A DNA stretch of 63,316 nt from Octopus bimaculoides (GCF_001194135.2 NC_068981.1:75242528-75305843), one strand, 5' to 3'; shown: positions 50,460-50,813, counted from the stretch's first letter. Numbers and translations: made by a program. The notes: generated from the sequence alone by a model not told the origin.

Positions 50460-50813
50460 GCAGTTACTGTTAATACCTCGTTCAGAGATTTAACATTGCT
50501 TGTTTTCAGTTTTTTGATATCAGTGAATAATTTCACTGGAAAAACTTATATATATTTGCCAAGGGATGTCTTTTTCATCGAAGGTCGGCGATTGTCGTAC
50601 GCTGAAGAAGGGCAATAACCCTGAAACTCGAGTACGTACGTATCGTAGATCAAGATGGGAAGGATAACTTCCCTTGGCAAATACAGTAAGGACACAGAAG
50701 TGTGTCGATAACCAGCTGGAGGAGATGTCCTCCTGGGGCTAAAAGCAACAGTAACATCCACCCCTCTGGGGGCAGTTACTGTTAATACCTCGTTCAGAGA
50801 TTTAACATTGCTT
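50460..50813 (+). mobile_element. Retrozyme-like element: 312-bp structured non-coding unit plus 42-bp terminal redundancy
   Basis: Identical 42-mer at 50460-50501 and 50772-50813; internal hammerhead; extensive self-complementarity; no long ORF. Confidence 0.75.
50589..50645 (+). ncRNA. Type I hammerhead ribozyme (short helix III with palindromic loop)
   Basis: Helix I cgtacg 50596-50601 with 50635-50640; CUGAAGA 50602-50608; helix II aggg/ccct with loop caataa; GAAA 50623-50626; helix III AC-[UCGA]-GU; cleavage triplet GUA 50632-50634; distal helix I cgat/atcg beyond an internal bulge. Confidence 0.9.

What the first reader, a model, noticed from the sequence alone, without database searches (positions are those of the whole stretch)
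50589..50645. Intact type I hammerhead ribozyme with a palindromic helix III
Seen in sequence: every core element is present and correctly spaced. Helix I is 6 bp (cgtacg/cgtacg), followed by CUGAAGA, a 4-bp helix II (AGGG-caataa-CCCU), GAAA, a short helix III AC-UCGA-GU (ACUCGAGU is an 8-nt palindrome) and a GUA cleavage site after 50634. Helix I continues past an internal bulge (cgat/atcg). Established knowledge: short-helix-III type I hammerheads with palindromic loops occur in Penelope-like elements and metazoan retrozymes and are thought to cleave as dimers; loop I/loop II contacts support activity at low Mg2+. Inference: this copy looks catalytically intact, unlike the degenerate cores elsewhere in the window.
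Basis: partly seen in the sequence, partly recalled or inferred. Interest (0 to 1): 0.9.

Follow-up and report, generated by a model that had tools for sequence, protein, structure and literature searches.

The report
Hammerhead ribozyme in octopus retrozyme-like insert
The motif is a real, complete self-cutting "hammerhead" RNA of the ordinary animal type, at the tip of a strongly folded 312-base mobile-element copy in an octopus-like genome; it is a new example of a known kind and its activity is untested.

Summary
At 50596-50640 (+) there is a 6-bp helix I, CUGAAGA, a 4-bp helix II with a 6-nt loop, GAAA, the 8-nt palindrome ACUCGAGU as helix III, and a GUA cleavage site after 50634.

Rfam 15 does not report it, even at E<=10. 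The Rfam type I model is narrow: it also misses natural repeated hammerheads from metagenome contigs. A covariance model I built only from three experimentally cleaving retrozyme hammerheads (coral, mussel, axolotl) ranks it first in the window at 27.1 bits, E about 1e-5; the next hit scores 14.7 bits.

Context decides the case. Helix I continues into a roughly 50-bp imperfect stem. The hammerhead lies in a 312-nt unit (50460-50771) followed by an exact 42-nt repeat of the unit's start (50772-50813). Folded as a circle the unit has z = -9.8, and the fold is specific to the hammerhead strand.

Best reading: a single 1.13-unit insertion of a non-LTR retrozyme-like, Penelope-related element, copied from a circular or multimeric RNA. 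Its ribozyme probably needs to pair with a second copy to cut. With one ribozyme, this locus cannot release a circle on its own.

This is a new member of a known kind. No other copy could be retrieved and catalysis is untested.

The parts
50460..50813 (+). Whole insertion: 1.13 copies of a 312-nt unit (354 bp)
   Evidence: Direct-repeat and self-BLAST analysis. The sequence left of 50460 and right of 50813 is unrelated to the unit. An assembly gap lies 24 nt to the left and a SINE starts about 7-10 nt to the right.
50460..50771 (+). One 312-nt unit (43% G+C), the predicted monomer of a small highly structured RNA
   Evidence: 312-nt start-to-start spacing of the repeat. Circular MFE -115.6 kcal/mol against -71.7+-4.5 for dinucleotide shuffles, z -9.8. 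Thirty control 312-nt windows from the same sequence gave mean z -0.28, minimum -2.75.
50460..50501 (+). First copy of the 42-nt terminal redundancy
   Evidence: 42/42 identical to 50772-50813.
50772..50813 (+). Second copy of the 42-nt terminal redundancy, i.e. the start of a second unit
   Evidence: 42/42 identical to 50460-50501. Its first 11 nt take part in the hairpin 50748-50782, so it belongs to the element's structure and is not a target-site duplication.
50545..50601 (+). 5' arm of the long imperfect stem that ends in helix I
   Evidence: MFE helices 50545-49/50686-90, 50553-66/50670-83, 50567-79/50654-66, 50583-86/50648-51 and 50588-92/50642-46. The stem scores -63.1 kcal/mol on + (56 pairs, 9 G.U) against -47.2 on -; z -8.2.
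50635..50690 (+). 3' arm of the long stem, beginning with the helix I 3' strand
   Evidence: Same evidence as for the 5' arm.
50593..50595 (+). Internal loop of helix I (loop 1), UGU opposite U50641
   Evidence: Read from the sequence. Any role in a loop 1/loop 2 contact is inferred only.
50596..50601 (+). Helix I, 5' strand CGUACG (positions 2.6-2.1)
50602..50608 (+). Core C3 U4 G5 A6 A7 G8 A9
50609..50622 (+). Helix II AGGG/CCCU (10.1-11.1 = A-U) with the 6-nt loop 2 CAAUAA
   Evidence: The Rfam RF00163 consensus loop is CAAAUA.
50623..50625 (+). Core G12 A13 A14
50626..50633 (+). Helix III ACUCGAGU. As a monomer it gives 2 bp plus a UCGA loop; between two copies it gives an 8-bp duplex.
   Evidence: It is its own reverse complement. 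Duplex energy is -10.7 kcal/mol while the hairpin alone has no stable fold. Cofolding two copies gives the double-hammerhead topology at -38.5 against 2 x -16.1 kcal/mol.
50634..50635 (+). Predicted cleavage site: A17 | C1.1 (GUA triplet)
   Evidence: Position follows from the hammerhead numbering. GUA is also the site of the validated axolotl Ax353 ribozyme.
50635..50640 (+). Helix I, 3' strand CGUACG (positions 1.1-1.6)
50748..50782 (+). Hairpin that straddles the unit junction 50771|50772
   Evidence: Helices 50748-55/50775-82 (8 bp), 50758-59/50771-72 and 50761-63/50768-70.

Best explanation
This is a genuine type I hammerhead ribozyme of the canonical metazoan design. It is carried by a 354-bp insertion made of 1.13 copies of a 312-nt non-coding unit, in a cephalopod (octopus-like) genome.

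The unit behaves like a monomer of an animal non-LTR retrozyme. These are small non-autonomous retroelements related to Penelope-like elements. Their transcripts cut themselves with the hammerhead, are joined into highly base-paired circles by a host ligase, and are copied back into DNA.

Shown here: the complete core and three helices; helix I running on into a roughly 50-bp stem specific to the ribozyme strand; an exceptional predicted fold for the 312-nt circle; and an exact 42-nt terminal redundancy whose ends lie far from the cleavage site.

Inferred: (a) The DNA copy was made from a circular or multimeric RNA. It crosses the uncleaved or religated site 50634|50635 and runs 42 nt past one full turn. 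(b) Cleavage works mainly when two ribozymes pair their ACUCGAGU segments into an 8-bp helix III (double hammerhead). The 2-bp monomeric helix III is unstable, and the monomer prefers a fold that hides the site. (c) With only one ribozyme, a transcript of this locus would be cut at most once, after 50634. It could not release a unit-length circle, so this copy is probably a dead-end daughter of an active family located elsewhere in the genome.
For: Motif: read directly. It is the only strict descriptor hit, with 0.003 expected per simulated window.

Model R1 was built only from the coral, mussel and axolotl ribozymes that self-cleave in PMC7229834. It scores the site 27.1 bits, E about 1e-5, over its full length; the window's next best is 14.7 bits. 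R1 scores natural repeated hammerheads from metagenome contigs 19-45 bits. It reports none of the 14 control loci in that search, which carry the search pattern but mostly little or no helix I/II pairing in my descriptor.

The architecture equals the 'canonical metazoan' description: helix I 6 bp, helix II 4 bp, helix III 1-2 bp with a palindromic loop, acting as a dimer (PMC4209133).

Unit: 312 nt and 43% G+C, inside the published 170-400 nt and <50% GC ranges. No coding capacity was found.

Fold: circular fold z -9.8. Validated coral and mussel retrozymes give z -3.2 and -1.1, a natural tandem unit (L012) -4.9, and control windows -0.28+-1.0. The stem is 16 kcal/mol better on the ribozyme strand, with 9 G.U pairs.

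Terminal redundancy: 42/42 identity, and a hairpin spans the junction.

Dimer: cofolding gives a double hammerhead at -38.5 against -32.2 kcal/mol for two monomers.

Genome context: degraded Penelope-like (HTH_animal + GIY-YIG) remnants lie in the same window, with best hits in Octopus sinensis. The literature links animal retrozymes to PLEs, rolling-circle mobilisation and frequent monomer copies, and describes 30-40-bp 'tails' at PLE insertion ends.
Against: Rfam 15 hammerhead models give no hit, even at E<=10.

No second copy of the unit exists in the window, in 120 metagenome loci that share the helix III pattern, or in 20 kb of O. sinensis DNA. Family membership, copy number and covariation are therefore untested.

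The defining tandem arrangement of retrozymes is not present at this locus: 1.13 units and one ribozyme.

The 10.1-11.1 pair is A-U, not the usual G-C. The hammerhead fold (-11.0) is less stable than the monomer MFE (-16.1 kcal/mol), which buries the cleavage site.

No target-site duplication was recognisable. The left flank is cut by an assembly gap after 24 nt.

Self-cleavage and RNA circles were not, and could not be, tested here.
Confidence: 0.72

Rival explanations
1. It is the remnant of a longer tandem array, either a retrozyme multimer or satellite, or the partial-tandem 3' end of a 5'-truncated Penelope-like element with its 30-40-bp 'tail'. The array was later broken at 50813 by SINE insertion and lost in the assembly gaps. 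On this view it is not a single >1-unit cDNA insertion.
For: A SINE begins about 7-10 nt after the redundancy ends and a second SINE follows. Assembly gaps lie at 50150-50435 and 51333-51758. PLE insertions form partial tandems with 30-40-bp tails. Retrozyme families occur as monomers, dimers and multimers.
Against: The 24 nt left of 50460 are unrelated to the end of the unit, so the array does not continue to the left. Nothing after the SINEs and the gap matches the unit. No RT or endonuclease remnant was found in ORF fragments from about 5 kb upstream to 6 kb downstream (45.6-56.5 kb). The two 42-nt copies are 42/42 identical, which fits one recent event better than an old, decayed array. 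The ribozyme is canonical, not the minimal PLE type.
Confidence: 0.2
2. It is a chance match: an AT-rich eukaryotic genome of gigabase size will contain a few sequences that satisfy a hammerhead descriptor without being ribozymes.
For: Extrapolating R1's E-value (1e-5 per 126 kb) to a genome of several gigabases gives roughly 0.4 expected chance hits; the descriptor estimate is cruder and higher. Rfam is silent. No homologues were retrieved.
Against: Chance does not explain why helix I runs on into a strand-specific stem of about 50 bp (z -8.2; 9 G.U pairs). It does not explain why the motif sits in a 312-nt unit with z -9.8 and terminal redundancy. It does not explain the exact canonical proportions, 6/4/2 bp with a 6-nt loop 2 and a perfect 8-nt palindrome.
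Confidence: 0.03
3. It is a DNA-level inverted repeat, such as a foldback or MITE-like transposon or a palindromic duplication, whose central spacer happens to resemble a hammerhead.
For: There are two roughly 55-nt arms, complementary to each other, around a 33-nt centre.
Against: The pairing is markedly better as RNA on the + strand (-63.1 against -47.2 kcal/mol) because 9 pairs are G.U, which read as C/A mismatches on the other strand. The arms are internal to the unit, not at its ends. No terminal inverted repeats flank the 354-bp element.
Confidence: 0.03

Closest known systems
Metazoan non-LTR retrozymes (Cervera & de la Pena 2020, PMC7229834; Li et al. 2026 preprint 10.64898/2026.07.22.740005)
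   Same: Type I hammerhead of the canonical design. Non-coding unit of 312 nt (published range 170-400 nt) with G+C below 50%. No LTR and no coding capacity. A highly self-paired predicted circle. GUA site and palindromic helix III, as in the axolotl Ax353 ribozyme that needs dimers. Monomer copies are known to be common. Co-occurs with Penelope-like elements in the genome.
   Different: This locus has 1.13 units and a single ribozyme, not a tandem array. The predicted fold is much stronger than for the validated coral and mussel units (z -9.8 against -3.2 and -1.1). The 10.1-11.1 pair is A-U. In the paper library searched, no paper describes hammerheads or retrozymes in cephalopods; mussels are the mollusc example. 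Expression and circularity are unknown.
Minimal hammerheads in the pseudo-LTRs of Penelope-like elements (Cervera & de la Pena 2014, PMC4209133)
   Same: Animal retroelement context, a dimer-dependent design with a short or absent helix III, and degraded PLE remnants in the same window. The weaker motif at 16720-16786 fits this type (helix I 4 bp, long helix II).
   Different: The focal ribozyme has the canonical 6-bp helix I and 4-bp helix II rather than the minimal 4-5 bp / 7-8 bp design. No RT or GIY-YIG coding sequence was found from about 5 kb upstream to 6 kb downstream.
Rfam RF00163 Hammerhead_1 (Schistosoma/newt-like type I)
   Same: Identical layout to the model consensus: 6-bp helix I, 4-bp helix II with a 6-nt loop (CAAAUA against CAAUAA here), and an 8-nt palindromic helix III (ACGCGCGU against ACUCGAGU).
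   Different: It does not reach any reportable score with the Rfam model. It differs from the consensus at 10.1-11.1 (A-U for G-C), at position 17 (A for C) and throughout helix I.
Newt satellite 2 and avocado sunblotch viroid double hammerheads (Forster et al. 1988, as cited in PMC4209133 and PMC6155905)
   Same: An unstable helix III that becomes a long helix when two copies pair. This restricts cleavage to multimeric RNA.
   Different: Those act within tandem or multimeric transcripts. Here a partner could come only from another transcript.

Membership tests
Hammerhead ribozyme, type I | Conserved core CUGANGA / GAAA(Y) / RUH in the right order | tested here: met
   CUGAAGA 50602-08, GAAAC 50623-27, GUA 50632-34.
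Hammerhead ribozyme, type I | Three helices around the core, helix I open, helices II and III closed by loops | tested here: met
   Helix I 6 bp, II 4 bp, III 2 bp (8 bp as a dimer). R1 aligns over its full length 1-48.
Hammerhead ribozyme, type I | Score at or above the gathering threshold of Rfam RF00163 (34 bits) | tested here: not met
   No hit at gathering threshold or at E<=10. Control: RF00163 finds L012 at 34.9 bits but misses the natural repeated hammerheads L019, L057 and L068, which R1 scores 27-31 bits.
Hammerhead ribozyme, type I | Covariance-model score above background with an independent model | tested here: met
   R1, built from three self-cleaving retrozyme ribozymes, gives 27.1 bits, E about 1e-5, against a background maximum of 14.7 bits.
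Hammerhead ribozyme, type I | Base pairs kept by compensatory changes among homologues | not testable with these tools
   No homologue of the unit was retrieved.
Hammerhead ribozyme, type I | Site-specific self-cleavage giving 2',3'-cyclic phosphate and 5'-OH ends | not testable with these tools
   This needs transcription and cleavage assays.
Hammerhead ribozyme, type I | Loop 1 / loop 2 tertiary contact | not testable with these tools
   An internal loop UGU/U lies six pairs from the core, and loop 2 is the 6-nt CAAUAA. Whether they interact is inference.
Metazoan non-LTR retrozyme | Short non-coding unit (about 170-400 nt, G+C <50%) carrying a type I hammerhead, without LTR, PBS or PPT | tested here: met
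   312 nt, 43% G+C. The ORFs are short and without homologues. Criteria are from PMC7229834.
Metazoan non-LTR retrozyme | Head-to-tail tandem copies, so that two ribozymes flank a unit | tested here: not met
   Only 1.13 units and one ribozyme at this locus; no other copy in the window. Monomer derivatives of retrozyme families are described, so I treat this as a retrozyme-like monomer, not an active retrozyme locus.
Metazoan non-LTR retrozyme | Predicted stable, highly self-paired circular RNA | tested here: met
   z -9.8 and 68% of bases paired, stronger than the validated coral (-3.2) and mussel (-1.1) units. The fold is strand-specific.
Metazoan non-LTR retrozyme | Multi-copy family in the genome; abundant linear and circular RNAs in tissues | not testable with these tools
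   The source genome and its transcriptomes are not searchable here.
Penelope-like element pseudo-LTR hammerhead | Ribozyme lies in a repeat flanking an RT + GIY-YIG ORF | tested here: not met
   No Pfam hit in ORF fragments from 45.6 to 56.5 kb. PLE remnants exist only at 18.4-19.7 kb.
Penelope-like element pseudo-LTR hammerhead | Minimal architecture (helix I 4-5 bp, helix II 7-8 bp, no real helix III) | tested here: not met
   The focal motif has helices of 6, 4 and 2 bp; criteria are from PMC4209133.

The most novel reading that the evidence does not exclude
The 354-bp copy is a direct footprint of rolling-circle reverse transcription of a 312-nt circular retrozyme RNA. The cDNA crosses the religated cleavage site and overshoots one full turn by 42 nt before integration. 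It would also be the first sign of an active circular-RNA retrozyme family in cephalopods, with an unusually stable stem built onto helix I.
Probability: 0.3. Interest if true: 0.45.

Novelty: new member of a known kind. Interest (0 to 1): 0.25.

Why it matters
Hammerhead-bearing retrozymes are the known route by which animals make abundant small circular RNAs with a ribozyme. Their mobilisation mechanism (rolling-circle reverse transcription, dependence on Penelope-like elements) is still inferred rather than shown.

A cephalopod family would extend the host range within molluscs. Copies with terminal redundancy whose ends lie away from the cleavage site are the kind of insertion footprint that can test the circular-template model, if many copies are compared.

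A practical point also follows. The Rfam type I model missed this site and several natural repeated hammerheads, so Rfam-only scans undercount animal hammerheads. For this single locus the finding is otherwise ordinary, since such motifs occur by the thousands in many invertebrate genomes.

Tried and rejected
Rfam 15 was run four times on the window or this site: the whole window at gathering threshold, and 601-, 86- and 53-nt slices at E<=10. None gave a hammerhead hit. A control on metagenome loci showed RF00163 reaches only 34.9 bits on a near-consensus hammerhead and misses others, so I did not take the silence as refutation.

I looked for other copies of the unit in four ways, without success:
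- Self-BLAST of the window found only the 42-nt repeat.
- The 71-aa ORF crossing the unit, used as a handle in the 5.8-billion-protein database, found nothing.
- A pattern scan of metagenome contigs for CTGANGA-N12-16-GAAACTCGAGTH returned 120 loci. Many are real coral-type hammerheads with the same helix III, but none is homologous to the unit.
- Twenty kb of Octopus sinensis DNA around a PLE-like gene held no hammerhead and no unit.

A search for a Penelope-like ORF next to the ribozyme used Pfam on concatenated ORF fragments of 45.6-50.1 kb, 50.4-56.5 kb and 14.5-18.5 kb.

A four-sequence seed alignment including axolotl Ax330 was misaligned by MAFFT, so Ax330 was dropped.

I rejected a target-site-duplication reading of the 42-nt repeat, because a hairpin spans the junction. 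I rejected a DNA-level inverted repeat because of the G.U asymmetry. No short target-site duplication could be recognised in the AT-rich flanks by eye. A weak HicA_toxin Pfam hit (15.6 bits, cut-off 27) on the PLE fragment is noise.

Full report
**1. The observation**

The sequence at 50589-50645 (+) reads CGAU-UGU-CGUACG / CUGAAGA / AGGG-CAAUAA-CCCU / GAA / ACUCGAGU / A | CGUACG-U-AUCG. The scissile bond is between A50634 and C50635.

In hammerhead numbering the core is complete:
- C3-A9 is CUGAAGA.
- G12 A13 A14 are present.
- A15.1-U16.1 and C15.2-G16.2 close a UCGA loop.
- A17 is an allowed H.
- C1.1-G2.1 opens a 6-bp helix I.

The one departure from the commonest sequence is the 10.1-11.1 pair, A-U instead of G-C. 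That this pair is usually G-C is my own knowledge. The validated axolotl Ax353 ribozyme, and a large coral-type family seen, have U/U at this position.

**2. Is it more than chance?**

A type I descriptor of my own finds this as the only strict hit on either strand. First-order Markov simulations of the window gave 0.003 strict and 0.08 relaxed hits per simulated window.

Rfam 15 reports nothing at gathering threshold for the whole window. It also reports nothing at E<=10 for slices of 601, 86 and 53 nt.

On four metagenome contigs carrying natural repeated hammerheads with the same helix III, RF00163 found only one family, L012, at 34.9 bits against a gathering score of 34. It missed L019, L057 and L068. 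The RF00163 consensus has the same layout as this site: 6 bp, 4 bp with the 6-nt loop CAAAUA, and an 8-nt palindrome. Its sequence is narrowly Schistosoma-like.

I then built model R1 from three ribozymes that self-cleave experimentally: coral Amil224, mussel Mg353 and axolotl Ax353. Their sequences come from Supplementary Table 2 of PMC7229834. With filters off, R1 puts 50594-50642 first in the window at 27.1 bits, E about 1e-5, aligned over its full length. The next hits score 14.7, 13.8 and 12.2 bits.

R1 scores the natural repeated hammerheads 19-45 bits. It reports none of the 14 control loci in that search, which carry the 17-base search pattern but mostly little or no helix I/II pairing in my descriptor. 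The score is therefore clearly distinguishable from background.

Extrapolated to a genome of several gigabases, the E-value still allows about 0.4 chance hits. The motif alone is not conclusive.

**3. Context**

The ribozyme is embedded in a 312-nt unit, 50460-50771. It is followed by an exact 42-nt repeat of the unit's first 42 nt, at 50772-50813. The flanks are as follows:
- Left of 50460 there are 24 unrelated bases, then an assembly gap (50150-50435).
- Right of 50813 a (CA)n-tailed SINE begins after about 7-10 nt. A second SINE and another gap follow.

Helix I does not stop at the internal loop. It runs on into an imperfect stem pairing 50545-50601 with 50635-50690.

Folded as a circle, the unit has an MFE of -115.6 kcal/mol against -71.7+-4.5 for dinucleotide shuffles, z = -9.8. 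For comparison:
- Thirty control 312-nt windows from the same sequence: z = -0.28+-1.0, minimum -2.75.
- Validated coral retrozyme: z = -3.2.
- Validated mussel retrozyme: z = -1.1.
- The natural tandem unit L012: z = -4.9.

The stem is an RNA-level feature of the ribozyme strand. It scores -63.1 kcal/mol with 56 pairs, nine of them G.U, on the + strand. The - strand scores -47.2 kcal/mol with 48 pairs. This rules out a plain DNA inverted repeat.

A hairpin at 50748-50782 spans the junction between the end of the unit and the 42-nt repeat. The repeat is therefore part of the element and not a duplicated target.

**4. What it is**

The unit length (312 nt), G+C content (43%), lack of coding capacity, canonical type I hammerhead and strongly self-paired circle match the published description of metazoan non-LTR retrozymes (PMC7229834).

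The ribozyme has exactly the proportions called canonical for metazoans: helix I 6 bp, helix II 4 bp, helix III 1-2 bp capped by a small palindromic loop. These are thought to act as dimers (PMC4209133).

[quoted passage not shown] It notes that monomer copies are frequent. PLE insertions typically carry 30-40-bp 'tails' (PMC8557442).

The host genome does carry PLEs. At 18402-18908 (-) and 19187-19685 (+) lie two inverted, stop-ridden copies of a fragment. Its conceptual peptide matches an Octopus sinensis protein (69% identity, E 6e-66, HTH_animal) and GIY-YIG-containing proteins. At the DNA level it is 78% identical to O. sinensis chromosome CM016860.1. This also identifies the source as an octopus-like cephalopod.

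**5. How it most likely works**

Shown: the sequence elements, the predicted folds and the terminal redundancy.

Inferred, step 1. The DNA copy contains the cleavage site in uncut form, and its ends lie 175-179 nt away from that site with a 42-nt overlap. The template was therefore not a unit-length linear RNA cut at the ribozyme. It was a circle, copied for more than one turn, or an uncleaved multimer.

Inferred, step 2. As a monomer, helix III is only 2 bp and has no stable fold on its own. The minimum-energy fold of the 57-nt domain (-16.1 kcal/mol) uses a shifted register, made possible by the GUACGUACGUA repeat, that buries the cleavage site. The hammerhead fold scores -11.0 kcal/mol. Two copies cofold into the double-hammerhead topology with an 8-bp helix III at -38.5 kcal/mol, against -32.2 kcal/mol for two monomers. 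The palindrome duplex alone is worth -10.7 kcal/mol. This fits the dimer-dependent cleavage shown for the axolotl retrozymes.

Inferred, step 3. This locus has one ribozyme, so a transcript could be cut once at most and cannot yield a circle. It is best seen as a daughter copy of a family whose active tandem members, if any, lie elsewhere.

**6. Rivals**

- A broken longer array or a 5'-truncated PLE end remains possible (about 0.2). It differs mainly in history, not in kind.
- Chance (about 0.03) and a DNA-level foldback element (about 0.03) are disfavoured by the strand-specific stem, the unit structure and the canonical proportions.

**7. Limits**

No homologue of the unit could be retrieved with the collections available. 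Covariation, copy number and insertion-site structure are therefore untested. Catalysis and RNA circles need experiments. In the paper library, no paper that combines 'hammerhead ribozyme' with 'cephalopod' describes such elements.

**8. Verdict**

This is a real, sequence-intact, canonical animal type I hammerhead in a retrozyme-like monomer insertion. It is a new member of a known kind and of modest interest.

Noticed in passing
window 16720-16786 (+): A second hammerhead-like motif with a complete core: CUGAUGA ... GAAA ... GUU. It has a 4-bp helix I, a long interrupted helix II and a quasi-palindromic helix III (ACCUGGU). R1 gives 14.7 bits, E 0.06; it is a relaxed descriptor hit, with 0.08 expected per window. 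The surrounding sequence has no unusual fold (z +0.8). It resembles the minimal PLE-type hammerhead and lies about 1.6 kb from a degraded PLE, on the opposite strand, next to the gap at 16877-17113.
   Followed up: partly
window 18402-18908 (-) and 19187-19685 (+): Two inverted copies of a degraded Penelope-like retroelement fragment, with stops and frameshifts. It carries an HTH_animal region and a GIY-YIG-like motif (CxxC...LIYCTKC..C..LYVGQT). It is 69% identical in protein to Octopus sinensis LOC115230173 and 78% identical in DNA to O. sinensis CM016860.1. The head-to-head arrangement is typical of PLE insertions. Pfam itself gave no significant hit on the broken pieces.
   Followed up: partly
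window 48945-49200, 50820-51115, 51113-51332 (+) and 17157-17447 (-): Four copies of one SINE family starting ...TTTCAGTCATTTGACTGCGGCCATGCTGGAGCACC... and ending in a (CA)n/(TA)n tail, 72-91% alike. From memory this is the abundant octopus SINE. Two copies sit back to back immediately right of the ribozyme element.
   Followed up: partly
window 41049-41096 (+) and 13409-13446 (-): Degenerate hammerhead-like cores (12.2 and 13.8 bits with R1, E 0.35 and 0.11) with broken helices. They are at the level expected by chance.
   Followed up: no
metagenome loci L012, L019, L022, L028, L057, L063, L068, L080 and others (contig series Ga0126336/Ga0126338/Ga0126343, OFE*): Several natural repeated hammerhead families share the exact helix III and site GAAACUCGAGUA/C. 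One large family has U/U at 10.1-11.1 (CUGAUGA-U-CGC...GCG-U-GAAA). One (L012) is a tandem pair 662 nt apart. Rfam RF00163 detects only L012, so the Rfam type I model undercounts such ribozymes.
   Followed up: partly
whole window: Fifteen assembly gaps (runs of N, 10-822 bp) and very many microsatellites, often at gap edges. No ORF with protein homology other than the PLE remnant. The window looks like intergenic or intronic repeat-rich cephalopod DNA from a short-read scaffold assembly.
   Followed up: no
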